A stretch of 64,000 bases of DNA from Podarcis erhardii (lineage: Eukaryota). Position 1 is the first letter of the stretch; each line of letters starts with the position of its first letter. The notes under the pieces are model-generated. The model made no database searches. It saw only the letters and a list, made by a program, of their open reading frames with translations, and was not told the origin of the DNA. The DNA is taken from the NCBI GenBank assembly GCA_964252035.1, contig CAXUOO010000189.1; one strand, written 5' to 3'. The translations under genes and the position numbers were made by a program. Of this stretch, positions 14,890 through 29,219 are shown piece by piece.

Positions 14890-17803
14890 TTGCTGTTTGT
14901 TTTGTTTGCGCAGCAGCAGTTTTTATTGCCGAAAAGCAAGCAGCCGCAGCAATTCGAGGCAGTCGCAAAAGGGAAAAGGCAGGGACAAAGAAATCAAAGA
15001 GAAAGAGAGAGGCGGTTGAGGAGGAGCGAAGCAGACGCATGCGAGCAGGCAGAGGAGAGAAGTTTGGGGCGAGCTTTTTTACGAAGACACAAGCTTTTTT
15101 TCAGCGGTTCAGACTTGGCTGTTTTTTGGCTGCTGTTTTTTTCCTTGACTTGTCTGCACATGCACGAAATCACGCCTGTCAAAGGAGGATCTTTTTCTTT
15201 CCACGAGGGGCTGTTCAGACAGAAAAAGAACGGGCTCTCCACTTCGCTCGAAAACGACGCAGAACCTAAAAGTTTCACCACTTTTATTACCAACAACGTG
15301 AACAACAACTCTCCTCCTCTACGAAGAAGCAAGTCCACTGGGTTTTTTTTCCCCTTTTTCAGGTGCAGCAGTCGTCAACAGTCGAAATTCACTACTGCTG
15401 CTGCACCACCAGTGGCTGTTGGAGCCTTTCTTCAGTCTGCGTGGAGTAGTCGAGTTTCTTCACTGAACCGAAAAAACAGTTCTCGGCTTTTCTTCGCGTC
15501 GCCTTCTTCCACGAGCTGCCAAAGCAGCAAACACGGTCTAGCAGGCGAAACTTTCAGGTGTACATACACCAGCAGTGCGCGTGCGAGAAGCTTCAGCAGC
15601 AGCGCCCGTGCAGCCTGCAGCAGAAGGCTTTCCCTCCTAAGCAGCAGAAGCAGTTCAGATTCACTACCACTACTACTACTATTACTATTATCAAATAGCA
15701 GGTCGACCACCACCACCACCACCACCAGCAGCAGCAGCAGCAGTAGCAGCAGCGTTTCAGGCACATGCAGCTACAGCCTTAATAGCGCTGCGAGTGACAC
15801 CCTCAGAAACTGCTGCAGACAAAAGAAACAAAGCAGCACTCGTTTGTGTGCATGCAGCAGCTCAGACTTCAACAAAAGTAGTAGCGCCGCTTTTTCCGAC
15901 TGTCCGCGCTGCTCACTGGTAAGCCCCAAAAACACGTTTTTTCCGCTTATTTTGTTCGACTCTGGCAATGTCTGAGAGCAGCAGGAATAACGATGGTAAC
16001 AGTTTTAACACTAGAAATGATCGGAGCAATAGTAGTGGTGGTAAAAGTAGCCACGACTGCCGCCAGGATGATAATACTAACGGTCGCAACAGACTCTGCT
16101 GCAGCGAAAAAGAGGGAAAAACGAGCAAGTTTCAGAGCAGACCAGTAGTTGCGAACTCTTCAGAAACTCTGCAGCGACCACAACGCTCGACTGCTCAAGA
16201 CAAAATTCAAACTTTGGAAATTCCTTTTCCAGTCATTCCTGTTCGAGTGCGCGTGAGTGAGGAGTTGCTGCAGAAGCTGCACGGAAGCACAAAAAGAAGC
16301 CAAAGCAGACGGCGACTCTTTTTTCCACTGTCTCGTCTGCTTTCCACGCTGCATCACTACGTGAAAGAAACGGCCTCTTGCAATAGCAACAGCAATAGCA
16401 GTTTTCACAGCTGTAGTAGTAGCGACAGTGTACTACATCGCGACTCCTGCGGAGACAGCAGCAGCACTGATTTGATCTTCAACGGTGAAAAACGGGCCAG
16501 CAGCAGCATCATCGAAAACCGGAGTTCTTTGCGTGCTCCACTTTCCACTGAACTGGAAGAGAGGAAGCGCCAAACAGAGACTGCTGCTGGTGCTTCTTCT
16601 GCTTCTCCACTAGCAGCAGCAACGCAGCCAGCAAAAACAGCCCAGAATCTGCGCAATTAGCAGCAGAAGCTCCCACAGAGAACAAAAGAGCGAAAAAGCG
16701 ACTCCTCCCACTGGCAACAGGACCCGAAGAAACGACAACTGCAGGTAAGGAAGCGAACTTGTCAGAGCCTTTCAAAGTCGCAGAACTGCTGCATGCGGCC
16801 ACTCGTTTGTATCGCTGGCTGCACCGCCTCAGGCTGCCTCTGCGTCTAGGCGTAAGCATCGTGGAAGAAAGCAGCTGCAGCGCTTTCAAAGAATTCGTTG
16901 CTTCGAAAGAGCCGCAACAACGGCAGCTTCAGCTGCCTCTACTTGAGAAATTCGCACTGGCAAAGTTGCATGCGTCGACTGCGTGTTTCAGCGAGAAAAG
17001 GAGCTCTTCCCCAGACGCTGCTGCTTTTTTTTTTCGTCCCCTCATCTACGAGGTGCAGAGAGACGAGCAACTGCATGCGCTGCTCTCGCAGTTCTTCAGC
17101 CCCCTGCTGAAAGACTACTTCAAAGAGCCTCTGTGCTCGCACGGCACTCAGCAGCAGCAGTCGGCACCGCTGAAAAGCTGTTCACAAACAACCACAGCCA
17201 CTGCTGCTTCAGAATTCTCCGACTCGTTTTTTTTTTCCTCCTTCTTGCCCCCTTCGTTCGAAAAAAGCGCCTTCTTCTGCACCTGCTGCTGCTCTCTCTG
17301 CTGAGTCAGTCTTCACTAGTGCTGCAGCTTTTCCTCGACCCCGCCCACTACTGCGCATTCTTAAACTAAAACCCACTCGCAGCACTCACCACAAAAGGGA
17401 AGAAAAAGCAGCAATTTCAACACCACCACCACCACCACCACCAACAAAAGCGGACTTGACTTCGTTTCTCGCTTCTTCTTCTCGTTTTTGTGTTTCTTCC
17501 AAGAGAACTCCTGCTGCTGCTGCTGCTGCTGATGTCTTTTTCGCCTCCACTCTTTCTCGAGTTGGGGCTGAAGCAGTTGGAGACGAAACTGCTGCTGCTG
17601 CACCTCTTTTTCGCAGTGGAGCGGAAACTGGCTCTTCACTCGCTGCACCAAGCACTGCTTCTCCCTTCAAGGAAGAGTTTGCTAGACTTTCTGCAGACTC
17701 GTGGACAGACTCAGCTGCAGCTGCTGGCTCCCTTTCCACACAAAAGTCTCTCAGTTCGCTGCATGCAGCTTGTGCAGTTGAAACAGGAAAAATGCAGCAG
17801 TGA
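14890..17803 (+). CDS. Chain of overlapping ORFs; probable long N-terminal extension of the TrhO-methyltransferase locus (or a separate hypothetical gene)
   Basis: ORFs 14890-15975, 15968-16660, 16759-17304 and 17456-17803 overlap end to end in different frames with protein-like composition (poly-S/A, EIPFPVIPVRVRVSEELLQKL, AATRLYRWLHRLRLPLRLG). Several breaks lie near homopolymers. A GTAAG donor is present at 15919. No family recognised. Confidence 0.4.
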
Positions 17804-20800
17804 AGATGATTATGCGGCCTTCGCGTGTGTTGGTGCTGTGGCTGCTGCCTCCCTGCGAAACTCAGTGGCCCGCAACTACTCGACTTTTCTCTCCACTTCT
17901 GCGTGGTTTGTTTCCGAATCCGAAAGTGCCGGTTTTTTCAAAAGCTTTTCAGGCACTGCGAAAAAAGCGCGCACTAAGCAGCTTCCCACCACTCTTGTTG
18001 AAGAAACTTTCTCCACTCATCAAGTCCCCACTTCTTCTGCAGCAGTCACAGACAAAGCGAGGAGTGCTGCCACTGCTGCAGCTTCTTCCACTCTTCCTCC
18101 ATTCTGCACTGCACCCAAAAAGTCCAGTGCAGTAGTTGCTCCTCTTCACTCGAATATTAGTGCTGGTGGTGGTGGTCCTCCTCTTTTCAGCAATGCTGCT
18201 ACGAATAGTGACGGAACTCCTTCTCCTCTTTCCCCTGCAATTCCTAGTGGAAAGGCCTCCCTCAAGTTGTGGAAAGAAGGCGACTTTCTGGGTGGTGGTG
18301 CAGCTCGAGAGGACTGCGCAAGAGGAGGTGTACGTACACCGCAACCACTGCTGCTGCCAACCACAACCACACCCCCACCACCACCCCGCACAACAGGCCC
18401 TTCAACGCAGAAAAAAGCAGAGAAAGTGGACTTTTTGTCTGTTGCTGCTGCTGAAGACACTTCCAGTTTCCAGTCGGAGAAAGCCCCGAGTTTGCCCTCA
18501 GCAAAAAGAAAAACAGTCACCAAAGAAAGTGAGTCTTTTCTCGGTCGCGCCTCTTCCTCGACTGCAAGCAAAGAAACCGCGACCGTTTCTTCTTTTCTCG
18601 CAGAAAACTGCAAGAGAGCAACCACAAAAGCAGGGAGCAAGGTTGCAGGAGAGAAGGCGCCCACCTCGAACAAATTCGTTCACACAAGTCCCACTAAGAC
18701 AACTGCGGAAAGTTCTGCTCGAGACGACGCAGTGCATGCACCGAAAAAGAGAGGAAAAGCAGAAGAAGAAGACGAAGAAGGAGAAGGAGTGGAGAACAGC
18801 GGAGAAGAAGCAAGTGCAGAAACAGGAAGCAGAGAAAAGCGAGTGGTGCTGTCTTTCTACAAGTTCGTGCCCATAAACAACCCCTGGGCTACTGCTGAAG
18901 CGCTGCGTCTGCTGCTGGAGCCGTGCGGAGTGGTGGGTCGAATTTACGTCGCACCAGAAGGAGTCAATGGGCAAGTTGCTGTTCCTGCTTTGCATGCTGA
19001 AAAAGACGCCAATAACTTCGACTCTTTTCGTGCTCTTCTGCAGCTTGTGCTGCCCCCCGCAACACCACCAAACGAAAAAATCCATTTCGTGCTAGACCCT
19101 TGGACCCTTCCTAACGCGCTACTGCCTGCAGTCAAAAAACACCCACTAACAGGAAAACACTCAGTAACAGGAAAATACTCAGCAACAGAAAAACACCCAC
19201 TAACAGGAAAACACCCACTTACAGTAGAACACCCACTAACAGGAAAACACCCACTTACAGTAGAACCCCCACTTACAGTAGAACACCCACTTACAGTAGA
19301 ACACCCACTTACAGTAGAACACCCACTTACAGTAGAACACCCACTTACAGTAGAACACCCCCCACTTACAGTAGAACACCCCCCACTTACAGTAGAATTC
19401 CCCCCACTTACAGAAAAGGACGTTGCAAGAAGGGCTTTGTTAGTGACGGAGTCGACAGCAGATTTTGCAGAAATTGGCAGCGAAGGAGGAGAAGGTAGCG
19501 GAGAAGAAGAGCCACCACCAGAATCAGCAGCTGCGAAGAAGGAAGAAGAAGCGAGCGAAACAGAGCAGAAAAGAGAGAAGAGCCCTTTTTCCGCAGAAGT
19601 GGGGAGGAAAGCAGGAACTTCTGCTTGTTCTTCCTCGGCAAAGAGCGTGGACTGCTGCTCGGACTCGACGACTGCCTCACTTCCCCAACAAAGAAAAACG
19701 AGGCAGAACTACTCAGCTTCGACGCCTACATTTGAAGCAGAAGAAGCAGCTTTTGACGCACTCCACATTCGCGTACGGCGTCAAGTGCTAGTCGACGGGC
19801 TTTTCACTGCTTCCCCTCAATTGCTGCGAAAAAAAGAGGCCACAAACTCTGCAGAAAACCCAGCACTTGCTCCGAAAGGAGTCGACGCAGCAGGAGAAGC
19901 AGAGAAAACAGACACCGAAAAAACGCAAGAAAGAGCAAAAGAAGAAGAAGAAGAAAAGGCCCTGAACTGGAGCGACTGTGGCGAAGAAATCGAGCCCGCG
20001 CAGTGGGAACAGAAACTGCAGCAGCTGCTGCTCCAGCAGAAAAACGAGAGACAAACTCTGCGTGAATCCGTTTCAGCAGCAGCTACTACTACTAATACAA
20101 CTACAACTACTACTAGTAGTAGAATTAGTGTAGAGCAACGCAAGTCTGACAAGCAAGTAGAAAGCAGCAGCCAAGGCAGAGCTGGCACCTTCGAAAACTG
20201 CGCTCGAAGCAGCTTGGGGCTCGAGTGTGAGAATGAGTGTGCAGAAGAGAAGGAGACCACCACTGCCCCACAAAAAGAAGAAAAAGGCAGAAACTTCAGC
20301 AAAAGTCCCCGTTTTATCGTGCTCTTAGACTGCCGAAACGACTACGAGTCTGCCATTGGAACTTTCGCTGGGGCCTCGCCACTCAACACAAAAGTTTTCG
20401 CTCAAACTTTCGGCTCCACCACTGGCGCGCTTGCCCTTCGACTCAATGAGGCGTTGAATCCACTCACCATTTCACCAAAAAAGCTACAAAAACAACACCA
20501 ACTACAACAACAACAACTACAACAACAACAACTACAACAACAAGTACAACAAGAGCTACAACACCATGTACAACAAGAGCTACAACACCCAGTAAAACAA
20601 GAGCTACAACACCCAGTAAAACAAGAGCTACAACACCATGTAAAACAAGAGCTACAACACCATGTACAACAAGAGCTACAACACCATGTAAAACAAGAGC
20701 TACAACACCCAGTAAAACAAGAGCTACAACACCAAGTACAACAAGAGCTACAACACCATGTAGAACAAGAGCTACAACACCATGTACAACAAGAGCTACA

Positions 20801-22287
20801 ACACCATGTAGAACAAGAGCTACAACACCCAGTAAAACAAGAGCTACAACACCAAGTACAACAAGAGCTACAACACCATGTAGAACAAGAGCTACAACAC
20901 CATGTACAACAAGAGCTACAACACCATGTACAACAAGAGCTACAACACCATGTACAACAAGAGCTACAACACAATGTACAACAAGAGCTACAACACCAAG
21001 TACAACAAGAGCTACAACACCCTGTACAACAAGAACAGCTACTACAACAACAGTCACAACAAGAGCTACAAAACCATGTACAACAAGAGCTACAACACCC
21101 TGTACAACAAGAACAGCTGGAATTGGTGGCAGCAGGAGAGCAAGGCCAGACAGGCGTGCTGCAAGAGCGAAAAAAAGTGGAAGAAGTGGAGGACATTGCG
21201 GTGCAGACGAAGCAAGTGGAAAAACAAGAGGAGGAGGAAGTGAAGGAGTTCGAGCACACTCTAAAGCAGAAGAGCGAGTCGTCGTCAGCGCTGCAGAAAG
21301 AGAACACCGAACTGCTTCTTTTCTGCACAGGAGGCATTCGCTGCGTGAAAGTGGGGGCTTATCTGAAGCAGCGCTTGGGCTTCAAACACGTTTTTCGACT
21401 CAAAGGGGGCGTGCTATCTTACGCCCAGTATCTGCAAGAAAAGCTGCAACAGCAGCAACAGCAGCAACAGCAGCAACAGCAGCAACAGCAGCAACAGCAG
21501 CAACAGCAAGAGGAAGGGGAGAAGAGCGGGGACTTTTTTTGGTGGTTCGATCGAAACAGCTTCTTCCGTGGAAGTTTGTACATGTTCGACAACAGACTGG
21601 TGCACCCTCTAACTTCTCATTTGCAGTCAGTGTCGAGCCACTCAGTGGGATCAGTACGCTCACTGCCGAGTCGACGCCTGTCACTTGCGCTTTCTTCAGT
21701 GTCCAACTTGTCGTCTTCGATTCAGTGGCTGCTGCAGCAGCTTTTGTCAGCAAACTCTTCAGCAGCAGTTTCGCGCACTCAACTCTTACAGCGAAAGTGT
21801 TGGCCCATTTGCTGAAGCATGCGCACCTTTAAAAAGCCGAAAAAAGCCAGCGACTGAGTCAGCGCAGCAGCCCGCGCATGCACTGTTGAGTGGAGAAAAT
21901 GGAGAAAACGCAGCTGCAGCAGACGCAACTCAAGAGACTCCTGCAGAAGGCGAAAAAGCCGAGTTACCAGCAGCAGCAGAAGCAGAAGCCCCCAAAATAG
22001 GCCCACTGCCACTAACTAGACAAACACGACCTGATCGAGCAGCTTCCGAAGCGAGCGCGACTTTCGAGGAAAAAGCGCAGACTTCTGCGAGACGAATTTC
22101 GTGGCCTGTGAAAGAAACTCGCCGAGAAAAACTGGCCGCAGAGAGAAGACGGAGCACGCAGAAACGCATGCAAAAGGCGCGAGAAAGGGGCCTGGATTTC
22201 TTGAACTTGCGCCTGCTCTCTTTGCTGCCTCACTTGGCTGCAAATCACGCTCCTCCTGCTGCTGCTGCTGCAAGTGCCCAATCAAAG
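17490..22287 (+). CDS. trhO: TrhO/YceA (UPF0176)-type rhodanese-domain tRNA uridine(34) hydroxylase module
   Basis: Motifs in family order: VLSFYKF (about 18846), GRIYVAPEGVNGQ, LHIRVRRQVLVDGL, LLDCRNDYESAIGTFAGA (about 20322), FCTGGIRCVK (21321), GFKHVFRLKGGVLSY, FRGSLYMFDNR. The Cys-rich tail CSQC...HCRVDACHLRFLQCPTC...GCCSSFC (21622-21747) lies in the +1 frame. A phase-0 donor AAG|GTATAA is at 22288. The true start is uncertain; 17490 is only the ORF-track start. Confidence 0.9.
19135..19416 (+). repeat. Coding minisatellite, 18-21-bp units encoding (K/E)HP(P)LT(G/V)
   Basis: cacccacttacagtagaa and variants; translated as KHPLTG...EHPLTV...EHPPLTV. Confidence 0.95.
20494..21120 (+). repeat. 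Coding minisatellite, 24-bp unit (about 24 copies) encoding QELQH(H/P/Q)V(Q/K/E)
   Basis: caagagctacaacaccatgtacaa and variants tandemly repeated, preceded by poly-Q. Confidence 0.97.
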
Positions 22288-22552
22288 GTATAAATTCTCA
22301 GCAAAACTGCAGCAGCAGCACACGAACCAGCTGTTCCACCACACTCTCGGTGGAAAATGGGGCTTTATTTCTGCTGCAGAAAAAGGGCTGTTTCAGGTGA
22401 CTTATACGCCCACCAGTTGGAAAAAGGCGGCAAAAGTAGGATAGGTTTCTTTTCCACTTTTCTACACCTCCTAAGTCATTTTCACAAAGTCGGACTAGAG
22501 TCGAGCTCAACAGGGTCCTGGATGACATCAACAAAAAAAACAAAGTAGTGGT

Positions 22553-22595
<43 letters not shown>

Positions 22596-22931
22596 CGGGG
22601 CTAAAACTCCACAGACTACCGAGTGCAGCAGCAAATCACTCAAATAGGTCTACGACAAAAGAAGTGAGACAGGAAATCAAAAAAATGTAATGTACTGCAG
22701 AATCTACAGCAGACACAGTCAACTTACAGCTGCACACACAAAACACATGTAAAACATTTATAAACACACATATGCATGCGCATGTACACGTAACACGTGT
22801 ATGTGTGATGTGGAGTGGATTATCACCGGAGCGGTGCCCTTTTGGCTCAAAACTTTCAGTGTATTTGAGTGCATGCAGTGCGCGGATCTACCTCATTGTG
22901 TGTGTCTTTGCTGGTGTTTTCTACTGTGCAG

Positions 22932-25900
22932 CAGCACATCAAAACAGGAATTGGTGGCTTTTTGCCTCGAACTGCTGCAGCACCAAACACAAGTGCTTTC
23001 TCCTTGCTGCGCTGTGCTGCTGCAGCGAAAGAGAAATTAGTGGCACCAAAAAGACTAGCAGCAGCCACAACTGCTTCTCAAGCTTTTCTTGCTGCAGAAC
23101 CGTCTTTCTTTGCTGCAGCCTTGAAAACCACTGGTGAGACTTTCCTCGACAAAGAAAGGCAAGTGGCTGCAAAAGAAGAAAAGTCCAGCAATTTTGAGTT
23201 GGAGTGCAAGCATTTGTTGCTGCAGCGACTGCCTGCAGAAGCGTCTACTGCAGAAAAACCCGCTTTGCTGCATGCACAGGAGTGCACTGCGAAGAAGAAG
23301 AAGAGAAATCTCGACTTTGAAGGCTCGTCGAAGCGACTGCATGCGCAGGAACTCCAGACGAGTGCTCCCACTTCGCCAAGTCTTTCTCTCGAGCGACTGC
23401 TGCATGCAGAAGCTTCTGCTTGGAGTTCTTTCTCTGAACGTCATCGAAGTCTGCTGGAAGCTGCTGAGAAAACTTCTCGGCTTTTGTCGGGGGCCCCTGA
23501 AAAGCGAGAAAAGCAACAACAACAACCACAACAGCGACACCAAAAAGTCCCTTTTTCTTCTGCTTCGAAGTTGCTAAAAAACAGTCGTTGCAGCAGCGTT
23601 TTTGACAGCAACAATAAAAAGGAAGATGCAAGAAGCAGCAGCAGCAGCCACCACGCTGAAACGAAGCCGTTGCTAGCAGCCAAGCAGAAACTCTCAACTC
23701 CTCAAACTTGCTTCTGGAGCAATCACTTGCAACAAAGAATTCTAGCCATGCTAAGCAAGTTGCAGCGTCCCCAAAAAATACTGGAAATCGGCTGTTTCAC
23801 GGGACTAGCTGGTAAAACTCTCGTGCGTCTCAGATTGCAAGCTATTTACTCTAAAGTGACTATATATCTTCTCGCTTGCGACGTGTAGACTCTATTATTC
23901 TATCCAGATACTTATGAGAACAAGGTAGTATAGGCTTCACCAGTTTGCTACTCACTGACACATCTTCCTCACTTACTTCTGCTACATATATTTCGGTGTA
24001 GTTCTGCCCTTTTGGGAGACTGCCTCGGGTTTTGTCTAGCCACGTATTTGCCCATTTAAGTGCATGTCTTTGCGAGATAGATACATGATACTCAGAACTC
24101 TTTATACTCTATGTGTTTTCTTGTCAAAACCTTTCTTTTAGTGTGAATAGTTGGTTCGTGTACGTCCTCTCTACGCCAATCTATGAAAAGAATGACGAAA
24201 TTTATACGTTAAAAAAAGCGAGTCTAGTTTCTGGTTCACATACATATGTATATGTTGTATGCCCCAACGTGAAATATGATATATATGGACTCAACGCATG
24301 CACTTATATCTCCAGTCACTAATTCAATTTGTTCTGTACTTCTGTGGATCTACGAAACTCTGTGAATACATACTCTTGTCTAGCAGAGACATCTCTGCTT
24401 CAAATTTCAAGACGCACAATGCTCATGGGTGTATGTTTGCATATATATATATATGTGTTATACATGTAAAATTCTCGAGGCAAATAGAAACCGTGTCTAG
24501 GAGTGGGGAATATGTGTGAACATCTCGAAGTAAACGTTTAAGACCGGTTTGTAATACGGAATATCTGTGTCTCCATTCCCACTGTCTGCATTCGTCAACT
24601 TGTTTGTGCGGGTACGATATCCAAAGGGGCTTGATAAAAAGTCACTTACAATATACATTTATGATCTACTAACTCGTGTCTAGCCCGTGAGAGATCAAGT
24701 CTGCGAACTTCTGTACATATATGTATATGTATATAAGGAGGATGAAAGTGAGTGGTGAAGTGAGCTGAGCATAGCGAGAGGAACTGAAGCAAGGACGGCT
24801 TTGAAGTGGATTTCTGCGAGGCTGATTTTTCACATTTGCACCATTGATAGCAACTTGTGTGGACGTATCGCATGCTGCTGACCCAGACGCGTCGATGCAT
24901 GTTTTTGCACTGGTTTGATGTAGTCGTTCTCGCCTCAAAAGAAGCCCCGCATTTTTGTACGAATATTGAATCAATCAGCACAGAACGAAACTCACTCACT
25001 GCAAAAACTCAGGAAGCAAAACTACTACCGAAGGCGACTGAAAAACCAAGACGAAACAGGCTCTCGCAACTGAAAGTTTTGTGTATTTTGTGTGCCCCCA
25101 ACAGCCCTGAGTCTGGCAGAAGGCTTGCTGCCTCTTCCTCCAGCGTCCTCAGCGGAAACAAGTGAAGTTTGTAGAGCAAATGAAGCAGCAGTTTCAGCTC
25201 TTTTTCACGTGGAAGAAGCAACAGCAGCAGTGGACAGAGTGAGACAACTAGTGCTGCGAAGCAAGCAGCAGCCGAGTTTGGTGGCGATTGAGCGCTGCAA
25301 GCGAGCAGCAACTGCTGCAGCAGCCTTTTTCAGAGCTTCTGTCTACTCTCCGTACTTGCACGTCTTCTGTGCAGAGGCGTTGCCACTCCTGCAGGGCCTC
25401 GTAGAGGGCCCAGCAATTCAGCAGCGCCCAGCAATTCAGCAGCAACTCGTAGAGAAAGAGGCTGACGAAGAAAGTGGCTTTGTTTTCAAAGCTGCAGGTG
25501 AGGAGCTAAGCAGCTGCAGAAAAAGCGCTGAGACTGCACAGAGCGCGCAGGCAAAGTCGCAAGAAAGCCCCAAAAAAGCGCGCGAAAACGTCGAGTTTGA
25601 CCTCATTTTCCTCGACGCCGACAAGCTGCAGTATCGCCAGTTTCTCGAGCTGATTTTGCATGCGCAGTCTCCGCTGCTCGCTCCCACGGGTCTGCTGATC
25701 ATCGACAACACGCTTTTCAGGAGAATAGAAGCGCCTCAACAGGGGGGTAAAGAAGCAGCTGCTTTCCTCAGTCAGCGAGTAAACGAAGTCTCTTCTTCTT
25801 CTTCTTCTTCAGTGCGAAAACTTGGCTGCTGCAACTGCAGGGGGGGAGGCAGTCACCGAAAAAAAGGGGAAAAAAGCGACTGGAAAAGGAGCCAAATTGA

Positions 25901-27061
25901 CTGCCCAGGCAGCAGCAGTAAGCGAAGAGGGACTGACGAAACAAGCAGCAGTGAAGGAGAAGAAGAAGATGAAAGGAGCATGCATCTCAATCACCACAGT
26001 GGGCAAAGCGCAGTGGGGGGAACAAGTGGAAGTAGTAGTCGGGATCGCGACAGTCTTTGCGAAGAAACTGCTAGCAGAAGAAGCAGCAGCAGTGGCAGTG
26101 TTTTCAGCAGCAACGGAACGAGTGGTGCAAGAAGTGGCTGCTTTGTGGAGGCCTCTAGTTTTAGTGGAAACAACCACTCAACTCGCAGCAGCAGTGGAGA
26201 CCAACTACGTGAGTATCCTAGCGCAGGAGTGGCTGGGGCCTCTGATCTGTTGGAGAAAACAGCGAAGAGCAAAAAAGAAGAATTGGCTGCTTCGGAAAAT
26301 GCTCGTTTTGCAGCAAAACATGAATTTTCACGAAGGAAACAACAGCGACTGCAAAATTTGCGTCAAGTCAGACGCCTGTTGCGGCGCCAGCAGCGCGTGG
26401 AACGCATCCAGCGTGAAATGCAGCAAATCAATTGCGCTCTTTATAGTGATTCTCGGATCAATCAGGTGACTCACAGGAAATGGGAAACTAACACAACAAC
26501 GTCGAATGACAAGATTTGAGCCTTCTTTTATCTGCGCTGGAAAAAATTCGCTGTTCAAAACAGACAAACAATGTTAAAAAATGGCTAGCTATACCCGTTC
26601 ATACAGATACATGCATATATGTAAGAGGAAAAAACTATCTCTCTGCGTGATTGTGTATTTGTAAGTATACGTACATATATGTGTATATCTGTCTTCAGCC
26701 TTCACACGCAGTAGGTACATACGAAGGCACAAGTGCAATCTCCACATCAAATGAATGTATGTTTTATGATCTTATACATATGAGTGCATATGCATGTTTA
26801 TGCTGATAGAAAGCAAATGGGTGGGCGCGCTTACAAGGATAGAACACTTGTAAAACCTGCTTTTATTTCCTGGAAAGCAAGAACTCGATGCATTCTGCCA
26901 ACTATGTGTTTCAGGTTATTCTGCCTGTAAGAGATGGACTTTCACTTGTCACATGGAAAGACGCCTACCAAACAGCACAGCGCATCGCAAGCAGTGCTGC
27001 TGCTGCTGCTGTTGCTCCTGAAAAGAATAATATTGTTGAAAAAGCTGCTGCAGCAGAGTGA
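22932..27061 (+). CDS. Class I SAM-dependent, cation-dependent O-methyltransferase module (Methyltransf_3: CCoAOMT/COMTD1/TrmR-like), 3 exons
   Basis: Exons 22932-23811, 25105-26465 and 26915-27061, all GT-AG and phase-consistent. Spliced motifs: QRILAMLSKLQRPQKILEIGCFTGLA|ALSLAEG (SAM motif I), FDLIFLDADKLQY, LLAPTGLLIIDNTLF, LYSDSRINQ|VILPVRDGLSLV. Stop TGA at 27059-27061. Confidence 0.9.
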
Positions 27062-27176: not shown

Positions 27177-27219
<43 letters not shown>

Positions 27220-29219
27220 AATATATGAAATCATATGTAAGCAGCATTCATATGTAGATATATATATATATATATATTTTATATATATATATGTCCGGAC
27301 AATACAGACAATAAATTCGTGCTGTGTTCATTATTTTTCCTTGTGGGTGTCTTCGCTTGACATCTTCATATGTGGAACAGACGTAGAGAGAGGACCATTA
27401 TGAGATTTCTATTGTTTCGTTTACTCGTTAGGTTGCTGCTTGTGTGTACTGGTGTTGTTGTACTGATGCATGCGTGCATTTCGGATGCCGGATTTGTTGA
27501 TTTTGTGTTTCTAAGAAAGATCCCATCAAAGTTTTATTTTTGGAGAAAATATAACGTTTATTATAGCTGAAGGAGCTGACATCAGGAATCTCTGCATGAA
27601 GGCATAATGGATGCCGAATTTTTTTTTTTTTAAGAAATGACTGCAGTCCTGTAGGCTTGAACAAAAATATAAATACTTGTATGACAGCTGAAATCTCTGC
27701 TGCTCCACTGCCGTATGTTTACTTGCTATGCTCATGTGCAAGAAAGTCAGCGGAAACAGTAGTGCAGGTCCAGCCGGAGAAGCAACTGGAAAACATTAAA
27801 CTTGGCAGATTGTATTTCAGTGAAGCTTTCCTGACAATTCCTTGAGTCACCAACGTAATTTTTCTTACTTCATTTTTCCACGTATATTCCTTCCTTTCTT
27901 GTATTGTCCCCCTCCATGTTGTATATGAAAATGCATAGTATGTTTGTACTTATATACATTTATATGTCTATTCTTACATACTCGTAAACTGATGTGCAAA
28001 TCTGCATGCTCGTTGCCTCATACAGACTATGTACTTTACACTTTGATTTAGAATCTTTTTTTCAGCGGATTCTTTTTTTGTTGTTATCCTATGCTTCATT
28101 ACTCTTACTACACAAACCAGACTTGCTTTTGCCGGCTACTGCGTCACTTTTTTTTCTCTCTTCCAGACGCTGATGGAACTGAGCCACAAATGAGGGAAAG
28201 TTTACTTATCGCACGTATATATGCATACACAAATAAGATTTTTTGACACATACATGATACATAAACATAGCAAATTAAGTATACATTTGTACGCGCTTAT
28301 GTATGTATATATATATATATACATATCAGTAGATTTCGTCAATCGGCAGAATTGAATTTATTCGTGGTCTATGTGCACAATTTCATTCTCAAAGCATGCG
28401 AACCATCCACTCCCAACGAGCCTTTCACACAGTTCTTTTCACGTTTCCTTTCGTTCAGTCTATTTCAACTGGTTTTTTGTTTTCTGGCAGTGAAGCACAC
28501 GCTCAATGAAATTCATCTGCAACTGATTTTGACTCTTGCCGCTGTGCTCCAAAGTCGTTAACAACATTATCAAAAATTAGCTGTACCGCAATGCCCCATT
28601 TTTTGCATTTTCGGTTTTTTATACTCTGCTAACTAGTGTAATGTCAATCTTTGTACGTTTCCATACACATAAATTAGATTGAAATACATATATATATATA
28701 TATATTATATATTGTGAGTGACATTTCGTAGCGTACAGTGAATGTCAAAGCTGCTGATTTGCAGTGTAGTCACATGTGGCTGTCGATCTGATAGAATCAA
28801 TTTCACTTTTACTCCATAATGTACTACCTCTCAGTAGGGGAGATTTTCCGCTCGTTTTTTTCAATAATAGGAATGATAGCATAGACGTTTTTGCAAAAAA
28901 TTGTTACTTTAGTTTGTTCATTCATACGTGAACGCTGATATGATTGCTGCAGTTAAATGGAGCGCGCGCTTCGTTCCTCATAAAAGTATCTTATAGATAT
29001 ATGAGTGAAACACTTTTTTTATATGAAAGCTCGTTCGTACATATATATCCTTTGTAATGGTACATACATATCTATGTGCAGCTGTGTGCGTTTTTCATTA
29101 TTCCCCATAGAAGTCTTGAATTAGTCTTTTTATGCTATTCAGCGGTGCGGCTACTTTCGCTCTTTTCCAGCCTGAGTTGCATGCACAGCGACACTCACGC
29201 TATCTTTTCAAACAAATAC

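What the first reader, a model, noticed from the sequence alone, without database searches (positions are those of the whole stretch)
18843..27061. Predicted fusion of a TrhO tRNA-U34 hydroxylase to a TrmR-type O-methyltransferase: a one-protein ho5U-to-mo5U pathway in a eukaryotic parasite
Seen: a full TrhO/YceA motif set is followed by an O-methyltransferase. The reading frame after the Cys-rich tail ends at a phase-0 donor (AAG|GTATAA, 22288). This matches a phase-0 acceptor with a good pyrimidine tract (ttctactgtgcag, 22931) that opens the first methyltransferase exon. That exon has no in-frame Met until just before the SAM motif (about 23748), so it needs an upstream exon. The SAM motif (LEIGCFTG) and metal ligands (DADK, DN) are intact. 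Established: in bacteria TrhO makes 5-hydroxyuridine at the wobble position using O2, and Bacillus TrmR (YrrM, same methyltransferase family) converts it to 5-methoxyuridine, which widens four-codon-box decoding. Inference: this is a Rosetta-stone fusion of two consecutive steps, implying mo5U in apicoplast or mitochondrial tRNA. I know of no description of this in Apicomplexa but could not search, and the methyltransferase substrate is inferred from context only.
Basis: partly seen in the sequence, partly recalled or inferred. Interest (0 to 1): 0.9.

Follow-up and report, generated by a model that had tools for sequence, protein, structure and literature searches.

The report
Fused tRNA hydroxylase-methyltransferase gene in a coccidian
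This Eimeria-like parasite has one long spliced gene joining a TrhO tRNA-uridine hydroxylase to an O-methyltransferase; the same fusion is already known from oomycetes and diatoms and is annotated in other coccidia, so it is a real but not new architecture that predicts an untested wobble-uridine modification, probably in the apicoplast.

Summary
All the TrhO parts are present: UPF0176_N, a rhodanese domain with the exact CTGGIRC loop, and the Cys-rich Rhodanese_C tail. They are followed on the same strand by a three-exon family-3 O-methyltransferase with intact SAM and metal motifs. The first methyltransferase exon has one Met, 20 codons before its end.

The fusion is strongly supported by comparison. 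Annotated proteins of Cyclospora, two Eimeria species, Cystoisospora suis, Besnoitia, Vitrella and a red alga carry all the domains in one chain. So do transcriptome ORFs of Rhytidocystis and Chattonella. Cyclospora has introns at all three of the window's positions, with the same phases, and its linking intron is only 186 nt.

It is not new as an architecture. Sakai et al. 2019 used the yceA-trmR fusion of Phytophthora and Phaeodactylum to discover TrhO. No searched paper discusses it in Apicomplexa.

Caveats:
- The gene starts several kb upstream of 18843.
- There is a frame shift at 21603-21621.
- The methyltransferase is not a close sequence neighbour of Bacillus TrmR.
- Hammondia annotation splits the two parts.
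- The compartment is inferred only.

Verdict: new member of a known kind, moderate interest.

The parts
14890..15975 (+). Candidate 5' region of the gene. It is a Ser/Thr/basic-rich ORF ending in a CPRC motif. An ATG at 15039 opens a signal-peptide-like stretch in another frame.
   Evidence: ORF list and sequence. The CPRC motif sits at the same relative place in the Cyclospora, C. suis and Besnoitia orthologues. The exact start and first introns are not resolved.
16226..16366 (+). Exon piece encoding the start of a conserved N-terminal module (IPVRVRVSEELLQKL...RRRLFFPL).
   Evidence: tblastn of the C. suis and Besnoitia proteins (1e-5, 7e-7). The module aligns with red-algal, stramenopile and coccidian fusions. 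It is predicted to be a beta-grasp fold.
16759..17304 (+). ORF with the second conserved block of the N-terminal module (...DEQLHALLSQFFSPLLKDYFKEPLCSHG).
   Evidence: tblastn of Besnoitia aa 663-690 to 17062-17145 (3e-5). ORF list.
18843..19022 (+). UPF0176_N (acylphosphatase-like) domain of TrhO.
   Evidence: Pfam PF17773, E 3.2e-15, 56.7 bits. tblastn to all five coccidian orthologues.
19138..19397 (+). In-frame 18-nt tandem repeat (HPLTVE-type hexapeptides) inserted in TrhO.
   Evidence: TRF: period 18, 14.1 copies, 90% matches. Translation.
19752..20375 (+). Conserved TrhO core blocks. These are the basic strand FDALHIRVRRQVL (19752-19790), NWSDCGEEIEP (19965-19997), and the start of the rhodanese domain, IVLLDCRNDYESAIGTFAGA (20316-20375).
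   Evidence: Motif coordinates. tblastn. NCBIfam TrhO equivalog hit.
20482..21112 (+). In-frame 24-nt tandem repeat (QQELQHHV-type octapeptides) inserted inside the rhodanese domain.
   Evidence: TRF: period 24, 24.4 copies, 90% matches. Translation.
21315..21437 (+). Rhodanese active-site region. The CTGGIRC loop is at 21324-21344.
   Evidence: Pfam Rhodanese, 25.1 bits against 22.2. The loop is identical to E. coli CTGGIR(C), in which C200, T201, G203 and R205 are essential (PMC6599085).
21564..21602 (+). Start of Rhodanese_C (FRGSLYMFDNRLV) in frame 0.
   Evidence: tblastn of C. suis and Besnoitia.
21603..21621 (+). Zone where the reading frame shifts by +1. It is either an indel in the assembly or a very recent frameshift.
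   Evidence: Frame 0 carries ...VHPLTSHL and frame 1 carries CSQC... from 21622. tblastn HSPs switch from frame 3 to frame 1 here. No splice of plausible length restores the frame.
21622..21750 (+). Cys-rich Rhodanese_C tail (CSQC...HC...C...QCPTC...GCCSSFC).
   Evidence: Pfam PF12368, 27.2 bits against a cut-off of 26.9.
21751..22287 (+). Linker. It includes a basic helical stretch (RREKLAAERRRSTQKRMQKARERGL...) shared with the orthologues. It ends at the phase-0 donor AAG|GTATAA.
22288..22931 (+). Predicted intron 1 (644 nt, phase 0) joining the TrhO part to the methyltransferase part.
   Evidence: Donor and acceptor sequences. There are homologous phase-0 introns in Cyclospora (186 nt) and in locus L001. 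It has no direct transcript evidence in this species.
22932..23811 (+). Methyltransferase exon A. It holds a variable linker, the N-terminal helices (LERLLHAEASAW...) and the SAM motif ILEIGCFTGLA. It ends at a phase-1 donor.
   Evidence: There is only one Met, at residue 273 of 293.
23812..25104 (+). Intron 2 (1293 nt, phase 1).
   Evidence: G|GTAAAA ... cccccaacag|CC. It has the same position and phase as Cyclospora (GIS S|LALAEGL) and L001.
25105..26465 (+). Methyltransferase exon B. It holds LSLAEGL, IERCKR, FDLIFLDADKLQY, LLIIDNTLF, a long Ser-rich insert and the Arg-rich helix RRLLRRQQRVERIQREM.
   Evidence: Pfam Methyltransf_3, 29.4 bits. PDB phmmer hits to 2gpy, 5zw3 (TrmR) and 8k1f. 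Alignment A2.
26466..26914 (+). Intron 3 (449 nt, phase 0).
   Evidence: CAG|GTGACT ... tgtgtttcag|GTT. It has the same position and phase as Cyclospora (RILH|VLLPVGDG) and L001.
26915..27061 (+). Methyltransferase exon C (VILPVRDGLSLVTWK...) and the stop codon.

Best explanation
A single multi-exon gene, from roughly 15-16 kb to 27,061 on the + strand, encodes one large protein with four parts:
1. an N-terminal leader;
2. a beta-grasp-like module found only in the eukaryotic versions;
3. a complete TrhO (UPF0176_N, rhodanese with the CTGGIRC loop, Cys-rich tail);
4. a linker followed by a cation-dependent family-3 SAM O-methyltransferase.

How it would work: the TrhO part would hydroxylate C5 of wobble uridine 34 using O2, giving ho5U. 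The fused methyltransferase would then methylate that hydroxyl, giving mo5U, on the same tRNA. This would widen decoding in four-codon boxes. The substrates are most likely apicoplast-encoded tRNAs.

Shown:
- the domain content;
- the conserved intron positions;
- the fused architecture in relatives.

Inferred, with my estimate of likelihood:
- the splice in this species (about 0.85);
- the two chemical steps (about 0.6);
- the apicoplast location (about 0.5).
For: Domains are confirmed. The catalytic loop is identical to the E. coli loop, whose residues were shown to be essential.

Fused proteins with all the domains:
- C. suis, 2674 aa, and Besnoitia, 2578 aa;
- Cyclospora XP_026192139.1, Eimeria media and E. 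flavescens;
- Vitrella, the red alga Cyanidiococcus, and Phaeothamnion;
- a diatom cluster of 79 members.

Transcript-derived fused ORFs:
- Rhytidocystis TSA GHVS01097939;
- Chattonella MMETSP.

Gene structure:
- All three introns match Cyclospora in position and phase. The linking intron there is 186 nt, and the exon after it has no Met.
- In the window the exon has only one late Met.
- In the window, L001 and Cyclospora the TrhO frame stops 1 to 24 codons after the GT donor. Hammondia has a similar candidate donor.

Function and location:
- The Vitrella and Cyanidiococcus TrhO parts exceed NCBIfam's curated TrhO cut-off (204.8 and 193 bits against 170).
- The methyltransferase keeps the SAM glycine motif, the three metal ligands, the Glu-Arg pair matching TrmR E85-R86, and an Arg-rich segment where TrmR has R178-R181.
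- Published precedent: the fusion of yceA with trmR guided the discovery of TrhO.
- The E. flavescens model and one Cyclospora model start with a signal-peptide-like hydrophobic run followed by a Ser/Thr/basic region.
Against: - There is no transcript evidence for this species.
- There is a +1 frame shift at 21603-21621 inside the TrhO C-terminal domain.
- The Hammondia hammondi annotation splits the locus into two adjacent same-strand genes of 1752 aa and 755 aa. No T. gondii model was retrieved.
- The methyltransferase domain is not closest to TrmR among solved structures. PaMTH1, 3cbg and 3tr6 rank above 5zw3.
- TrmR's R90 is not conserved, and R86 is Arg in only 8 of 18 fused representatives.
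- The window's TrhO score is below NCBIfam's cut-off (101 against 170 bits) because of large repeat insertions.
- Targeting is judged by eye only.
- Oomycetes have the fusion without a plastid.
Confidence: 0.6

Rival explanations
1. These are two adjacent, co-oriented genes. TrhO ends at the TAA at 22291, and the methyltransferase is transcribed and translated separately from an unrecognised upstream start exon. The two proteins still act in one pathway.
For: The Hammondia hammondi annotation has two genes here. The 644-nt gap in the window is long enough for regulatory sequence. A relative (L001) has in-frame Met codons in the corresponding exon. ATG-bearing small ORFs exist at 22772 and 22801 in other frames.
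Against: The gap is 186 nt in Cyclospora and 152 nt in E. media, and the exon after it has no usable Met. Fused ORFs are seen in transcriptomes. The annotated Hammondia start lies in a CT-rich tract that ends in CAG, which looks like the 3' end of an intron.
Confidence: 0.1
2. The gene is fused, but the protein does different chemistry or acts elsewhere. The methyltransferase might act on a small catechol-like molecule or another RNA. Alternatively, the enzyme might work on cytosolic tRNAs, or on tRNAs imported into the mitochondrion, rather than on apicoplast tRNAs.
For: The nearest solved relatives of the methyltransferase domain are small-molecule or uncharacterised O-methyltransferases. 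TrmR-specific arginines are only partly kept. Oomycetes lack a plastid yet have the fusion. The added beta-grasp module has no known role.
Against: Persistent fusion to a bona fide TrhO runs across red algae, stramenopiles, chromerids and Apicomplexa. This argues that the two activities share a substrate. A basic strand in TrhO and an Arg-rich segment in the methyltransferase fit RNA binding.
Confidence: 0.2
3. The copy in this genome is a recently inactivated pseudogene, because the frame breaks at 21603-21621.
For: The frame change is in the sequence as given and has no N nearby. No splice of plausible length restores the frame; the only candidates are 27 nt or 31 nt.
Against: More than 1000 codons downstream stay open in the expected frames, across three conserved introns, with all motifs intact. 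This is unlikely after any length of neutral decay. Draft coccidian assemblies carry indel errors (my own knowledge).
Confidence: 0.07

Closest known systems
yceA(trhO)-trmR fusion genes of Phytophthora sojae, P. ramorum and Phaeodactylum tricornutum (Sakai et al. 2019, PMC6599085, Fig. 3b)
   Same: The domain order is the same: TrhO followed by a family-3 O-methyltransferase in one gene. The inferred logic of two consecutive steps of xo5U34 synthesis is the same. My searches show the same architecture in diatoms, raphidophytes, Phaeothamnion, a red alga, Vitrella and Apicomplexa.
   Different: The coccidian versions are two to four times longer because of low-complexity and tandem-repeat inserts. 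They are split by conserved introns and carry long N-terminal leaders. None of these fusions has been characterised biochemically, so far as the searched papers show. Apicomplexan members are not mentioned in any paper I found.
Bacterial TrhO (E. coli YceA, B. subtilis YbfQ)
   Same: It has UPF0176_N, a rhodanese domain with an identical CTGGIRC loop, and the Cys-rich Rhodanese_C tail. NCBIfam's TrhO equivalog is the best hit.
   Different: It is interrupted by an 18-nt and a 24-nt tandem-repeat insert and a poly-Gln run. It is preceded by a beta-grasp-like module and a leader. It scores below the curated cut-off. It has a frame shift before the Cys-rich tail.
Bacillus subtilis TrmR (YrrM; PDB 5ZW3/5ZW4), the ho5U34 methyltransferase
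   Same: It belongs to the same Pfam family (Methyltransf_3). It keeps the SAM motif, the metal ligands corresponding to D133, D159 and N160, the Glu-Arg pair corresponding to E85-R86, and an Arg-rich stretch before the last helix.
   Different: It is not the nearest solved relative when complete orthologous domains are used. R90 is not kept. The domain carries long inserts. Ryu et al. found close TrmR neighbours only in Firmicutes.
Cation-dependent small-molecule O-methyltransferases (PaMTH1 4QVK, Synechocystis 3CBG, Coxiella 3TR6, CCoAOMT 1SUI)
   Same: They are the best or near-best sequence matches among solved structures, with the same fold and metal site.
   Different: They are stand-alone enzymes and are not fused to an RNA-modifying domain. 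They lack the Glu-Arg pair (they read D-V, D-Q or E-Y at that spot in the alignments) and the Arg-rich pre-helix segment.

Membership tests
TrhO (UPF0176 / YceA) tRNA U34 hydroxylase | N-terminal UPF0176_N (acylphosphatase-like) domain | tested here: met
   PF17773, E 3.2e-15, 56.7 bits against a cut-off of 26.2, at nt 18843-19022.
TrhO (UPF0176 / YceA) tRNA U34 hydroxylase | Rhodanese domain with the CXGGXR loop. C200, T201, G203 and R205 are essential in E. coli. | tested here: met
   CTGGIRC at 21324-21344. Pfam Rhodanese, 25.1 bits against 22.2. Essential residues come from PMC6599085.
TrhO (UPF0176 / YceA) tRNA U34 hydroxylase | Cys-rich Rhodanese_C tail contiguous with the rhodanese domain | tested here: inconclusive
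   PF12368 passes (27.2 against 26.9 bits), but it lies in the +1 frame relative to the preceding FDNRL.
TrhO (UPF0176 / YceA) tRNA U34 hydroxylase | Score above NCBIfam's curated equivalog cut-off (NF001133, 170 bits) | tested here: not met
   The window scores 101.3 bits and Cyclospora 122.8 bits, both lowered by inserts. The compact fused orthologues pass: Vitrella 204.8 and Cyanidiococcus 193.
TrhO (UPF0176 / YceA) tRNA U34 hydroxylase | O2-dependent formation of ho5U34 on tRNA | not testable with these tools
   This needs an enzyme assay or mass spectrometry.
TrmR (ho5U34 O-methyltransferase) | Methyltransf_3 fold with the SAM-binding glycine motif | tested here: met
   PF01596, 29.4 bits against 22, on exon B alone. 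ILEIGCFTG at 23781-23807. The full domain is seen in orthologues.
TrmR (ho5U34 O-methyltransferase) | Mg2+ ligands Asp133, Asp159 and Asn160 | tested here: met
   The alignment to 5zw3 pairs FLDADK with FIDAAK and IIDN with ITDN. Ligand numbering comes from PMC6158493.
TrmR (ho5U34 O-methyltransferase) | tRNA-binding Arg86, Arg90 and Arg178, conserved specifically in TrmR orthologues | tested here: inconclusive
   The window has I-E-R-C-K-R, so R86 is kept and the next Arg is one position early. It also has an Arg-rich run before the last helix. Among 18 fused representatives, position 86 is Arg in 8 and position 90 is mostly Ala. The positions were mapped from motif anchors and from my recollection of the TrmR sequence, checked against the paper's residue numbers. 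No TrmR row was in the alignment.
TrmR (ho5U34 O-methyltransferase) | Closest characterised relatives are TrmR proteins | tested here: not met
   For the Cyclospora domain, 5zw3 ranks 6th (5.4e-7) behind PaMTH1, 3cbg, 3r3h and 2hnk. For the Vitrella domain, 5zw3 ranks 21st. Only the short window exon ranks 2gpy and 5zw3 first, at about 1e-4.
TrmR (ho5U34 O-methyltransferase) | Methylation of ho5U34 to mo5U34 | not testable with these tools
   This needs an assay, complementation or mass spectrometry.
Eukaryotic TrhO-methyltransferase fusion (Sakai et al. 2019) | Both enzymes in one polypeptide, with TrhO N-terminal | tested here: met
   In orthologues it is shown directly. In the window it follows from a phase-compatible splice at 22287/22932 whose position and phase are conserved. 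No cDNA is available for this species.
Eukaryotic TrhO-methyltransferase fusion (Sakai et al. 2019) | Fusion present at the transcript level | tested here: met
   The Rhytidocystis TSA complete ORF of 1470 aa has all four Pfam domains. Chattonella MMETSP transcripts also carry the fusion. This was not tested for the window's own species.

The most novel reading that the evidence does not exclude
Coccidia, and probably the common ancestor of apicomplexans and chromerids, make mo5U or another xo5U. The searched papers treat this modification as essentially bacterial. It would sit at the wobble position of apicoplast tRNAs. The enzyme would be a three-module protein (beta-grasp module, TrhO, O-methyltransferase) inherited with the red-algal plastid. 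Four-codon boxes in the minimal apicoplast tRNA set would then be read by modified uridine, not by the unmodified 'superwobbling' uridine now assumed.
Probability: 0.4. Interest if true: 0.65.

Novelty: new member of a known kind. Interest (0 to 1): 0.45.

Why it matters
Apicoplast translation works with about 25 tRNA species. Its wobble-modifying enzymes (MnmA, MnmE/G, TilS) are being shown one by one to be essential in Plasmodium or important in Toxoplasma. Papers on that system explain four-codon-box reading by unmodified U34 and do not mention hydroxyuridine.

A conserved fused TrhO-methyltransferase in coccidia, Rhytidocystis and Vitrella gives a concrete, testable alternative for at least part of the phylum. 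It names the gene to tag, knock out and assay.

It also extends the fusion that led to the discovery of TrhO from three stramenopiles to red algae, chromerids and Apicomplexa. That distribution fits inheritance with the red plastid.

For genome annotation, it shows that the Hammondia models (split) and the E. media model (reads through one intron and lacks the last exon) need correction.

Tried and rejected
1. The first homologue search used the whole 1441-aa ORF. It was swamped by low-complexity words and returned one hit. Restricting the words to the conserved N-domain of a relative solved this.
2. I looked for a Toxoplasma gondii orthologue with two length windows and found none. Nothing can be said about T. 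gondii.
3. NCBIfam has no model that recognises these methyltransferase domains as TrmR or as anything specific.
4. I built a FastTree of 133 methyltransferase domains. The coccidian and Rhytidocystis fusions form one long-branched clade. The algal and chromerid fusions sit elsewhere, among short, probably fragmentary, ORFs. Deep nodes are unresolved and no labelled TrmR was in the tree. I therefore drew no conclusion on a single or multiple origin, or on the bacterial donor.
5. I considered a mini-intron to explain the frame shift at about 21600-21630. Removing 27 nt keeps the frame unchanged. Removing 31 nt would restore the frame but deletes the first Cys of the tail and is implausibly short. 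Both were rejected.
6. I considered an alternative acceptor at 22980/22981. It is phase 1 and incompatible with the phase-0 donor, so it was not preferred.
7. The search of earlier findings returned nothing for this locus or these words.
8. Literature searches for TrhO together with apicoplast returned no paper. A broader search was uninformative.

Full report
**What is in the sequence**

The window has the composition and the CAG/poly-Gln repeats of a coccidian.

On the + strand a long frame-0 ORF (17490-21815) contains these TrhO features:
- Pfam UPF0176_N starts at nt 18843 (E 3.2e-15).
- Conserved TrhO core blocks lie at 19752-20375.
- The rhodanese active-site region lies at 21315-21437. 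Its loop CTGGIRC is letter for letter that of E. coli TrhO. In E. coli, C200, T201, G203 and R205 were shown to be essential (PMC6599085).
- NCBIfam's TrhO equivalog is the top hit (5.6e-29, 101 bits). It falls below the curated 170 bits because the domain is interrupted by two in-frame tandem-repeat arrays (19138-19397, period 18; 20482-21112, period 24) and a poly-Gln run.

The last TrhO element is the Cys-rich Rhodanese_C tail. It is present and passes Pfam's cut-off. It sits in the +1 frame from 21622, whereas the preceding FDNRL is in frame 0. tblastn of orthologues switches frame at exactly this point. No intron of plausible length repairs this. I read it as an assembly indel or a very recent mutation, because more than 1000 downstream codons remain intact.

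**The methyltransferase**

I derived three exons: 22932-23811, 25105-26465 and 26915-27061. The introns are of phase 1 (G|GTAAAA...aacag|CC) and phase 0 (CAG|GTGACT...tttcag|GTT).

The pieces align end to end with the C-terminal 450-580 residues of annotated proteins of Cystoisospora suis and Besnoitia besnoiti. The SAM motif (ILEIGCFTG), the metal ligands (FLDADK, IIDN) and the C-terminal LPVRDG motif are intact.

Exon A has a single Met, at residue 273 of 293. That lies inside the conserved domain, and well downstream of the N-terminal helices of the fold (LERLLHAEASAW...).

**Is it one gene?**

The TrhO-tail frame ends AAG|GTATAA, with the stop inside the would-be intron. A pyrimidine tract plus CAG at 22931 opens exon A in the same phase. 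Comparative evidence makes this junction convincing.

1. Synteny and exon structure. A 42.7-kb contig of a Cystoisospora-like organism (L001) has the same layout: a TrhO ORF, a gap of about 540 nt, then three methyltransferase exons. Its TrhO frame ends GGT|GTGAGTTAG, and a CT-rich tract plus CAG opens the next exon in phase 0.
2. The same junction in an annotated protein. The annotated C. suis protein (2674 aa, with all four Pfam domains) joins ...NVPDIPG to ESQTHESRF.... That is precisely the junction I predicted in L001 (...VACAAG|SPQTHGVRF...).
3. Fused models in other coccidia. Fused proteins are annotated in Besnoitia (2578 aa), Cyclospora cayetanensis (XP_026192139.1, 1117 aa), Eimeria media and E. 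flavescens.
4. Intron conservation. Mapping the Cyclospora protein onto its genome shows introns at all three of the window's positions, with the same phases. These are ...IPPRMP|DFRGS... (phase 0, 186 nt), GIS S|LALAEGL (phase 1) and RILH|VLLPVGDG (phase 0). A 186-nt gap cannot hold a terminator plus a promoter, and the exon after it has no Met at all.
5. Transcript evidence. A complete transcriptome ORF of the apicomplexan Rhytidocystis sp. (TSA GHVS01097939, 1470 aa) carries UPF0176_N, Rhodanese, Rhodanese_C and Methyltransf_3. MMETSP transcripts of the raphidophyte Chattonella also carry the fusion.

One annotation disagrees. Hammondia hammondi has two adjacent genes here. The upstream frame there also passes a GTGAGG donor 17 codons before its stop. 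The annotated start of the second gene lies in a CT-rich tract ending in CAG. I take this to be a split model.

I put the probability that the window encodes one fused protein at about 0.85.

**The gene is larger than the finding**

Orthologue tblastn hits at 16226-16366 and 17062-17145, and a CPRC-containing ORF at 14890-15975, show that coding sequence extends at least 2.6 kb, and probably about 4 kb, upstream of 18843.

The block at 16226 begins a module of about 110 residues (V.V.I.PE.R..L...KR.VF.P...). This module precedes TrhO in the red-algal, stramenopile and coccidian fusions. An AlphaFold model of the Chattonella copy (pLDDT 74.7, pTM 0.60) gives a beta-grasp fold. Its best, weak, matches are PB1, RA and ubiquitin-like domains (E about 2e-3 to 6e-3). 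Its role is unknown.

**How widespread, and is it new?**

An exhaustive profile search with the methyltransferase domain found at least 16 cluster representatives, among the best 150, that also carry TrhO parts. Most have all three parts I searched for, and a few are fragments. The named ones are coccidia, Vitrella, the red alga Cyanidiococcus, and Phaeothamnion. The ESM Atlas has a 79-member, all-eukaryotic cluster with this architecture, mostly from diatoms.

The decisive point for novelty is published. Sakai et al. 2019 state that yceA is encoded as a fusion with trmR in Phytophthora sojae, P. ramorum and Phaeodactylum, and they used this to pick yceA as the missing hydroxylase. The Rosetta-stone inference is thus established.

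What I did not find is any paper linking TrhO or hydroxyuridine to Apicomplexa or the apicoplast. Two recent papers on apicoplast wobble modification do not mention them, and one of them invokes superwobbling by unmodified U.

**What the methyltransferase is**

It is clearly a cation-dependent family-3 O-methyltransferase. Calling it 'TrmR-type' is reasonable but not proven.
- With only the window's exon B, the best solved matches are 2gpy, B. subtilis TrmR (5zw3) and a 'tRNA 5-hydroxyuridine methyltransferase' (8k1f), at marginal E-values.
- With complete orthologous domains, PaMTH1, 3cbg, 3tr6 and others rank above TrmR.
- Ryu et al. 2018 name Arg86, Arg90 and Arg178 as TrmR-specific tRNA contacts.
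- The window keeps the Glu-Arg pair (IER) and has an Arg-rich run before the last helix. R90 is not conserved, and R86 is Arg in only 8 of 18 fused representatives.

The strongest argument for ho5U as substrate is the persistent fusion itself.

**Where it acts**

This is inferred. Apicomplexan mitochondria encode no tRNAs and import cytosolic ones (established knowledge, not tested here). If the enzyme serves organelle-encoded tRNAs, the apicoplast is therefore the candidate.

The E. flavescens model and one Cyclospora model begin with a hydrophobic, signal-peptide-like run followed by a Ser/Thr/basic region. C. suis is annotated as a 'transmembrane protein'. In the window an ATG at 15039 opens a similar stretch, but in another frame.

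The presence of the fusion in plastid-less oomycetes shows that the fusion is not tied to plastids.

**Verdict**

The feature is a new, so far undiscussed, member of a known kind of fusion. Its interest is moderate. It gives apicoplast-translation researchers a specific, testable candidate for an xo5U pathway, but it does not overturn anything yet.

Noticed in passing
window 21603-21621: The reading frame of the TrhO gene shifts by +1 between FDNRL...SHL (frame 0) and the Cys-rich tail (frame 1). There is no N nearby and no plausible intron. It is probably an assembly indel.
   Followed up: partly
window 16226-16366 and 16759-17304; also P0028:84-236, P0117:100-234, P0045:1-132: A conserved module of about 110 residues precedes TrhO in red-algal, stramenopile and coccidian fusions. 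It has no Pfam match. Its predicted fold is beta-grasp (PB1/ubiquitin-like), at moderate confidence.
   Followed up: partly
window 19138-19397 and 20482-21112: Two in-frame tandem repeats (18 nt x 14, HPLTVE-type; 24 nt x 24, QQELQHHV-type) are inserted inside the TrhO domains. The second sits between the two halves of the rhodanese domain. A (CAG/CAA)n poly-Gln run lies at 21442-21508.
   Followed up: partly
L004 3951-12850 (Hammondia hammondi KL544031.1): The annotation splits the locus into a 1752-aa gene with the TrhO part and the 755-aa HHA_461960 with the methyltransferase. The start of the second model lies in a CT-rich tract that looks like the 3' end of an intron.
   Followed up: partly
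L002 5213-6520 (Eimeria media JBPVOH010000049.1): The annotated E. media model reads through the conserved phase-1 intron, adding about 50 unrelated residues and a 44-nt 'intron'. It ends in intron sequence instead of the last LPVRDG exon.
   Followed up: partly
ESM Atlas search with P0018, structure row 4: A bacterial cluster, mostly Planctomycetota, fuses TrhO domains to a pseudouridine synthase (PseudoU_synth_2). This is another RNA-modification fusion partner of TrhO.
   Followed up: no
window 22552-22595 and 27181-27292: (TA)n microsatellites lie in intron 1 and just downstream of the stop codon. The AT-rich flanks contrast with the roughly 50% GC of the exons.
   Followed up: no
P0014 and P0017 (Scytosiphon, Pylaiella); P0012 (Nemacystus): Brown-algal proteins of 478-666 aa have the closely related methyltransferase domain at the C-terminus. 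Pfam found no TrhO family in the three scanned (P0012, P0014, P0017), and my phmmer check found none either. They may be partial models or a different N-terminal partner.
   Followed up: no
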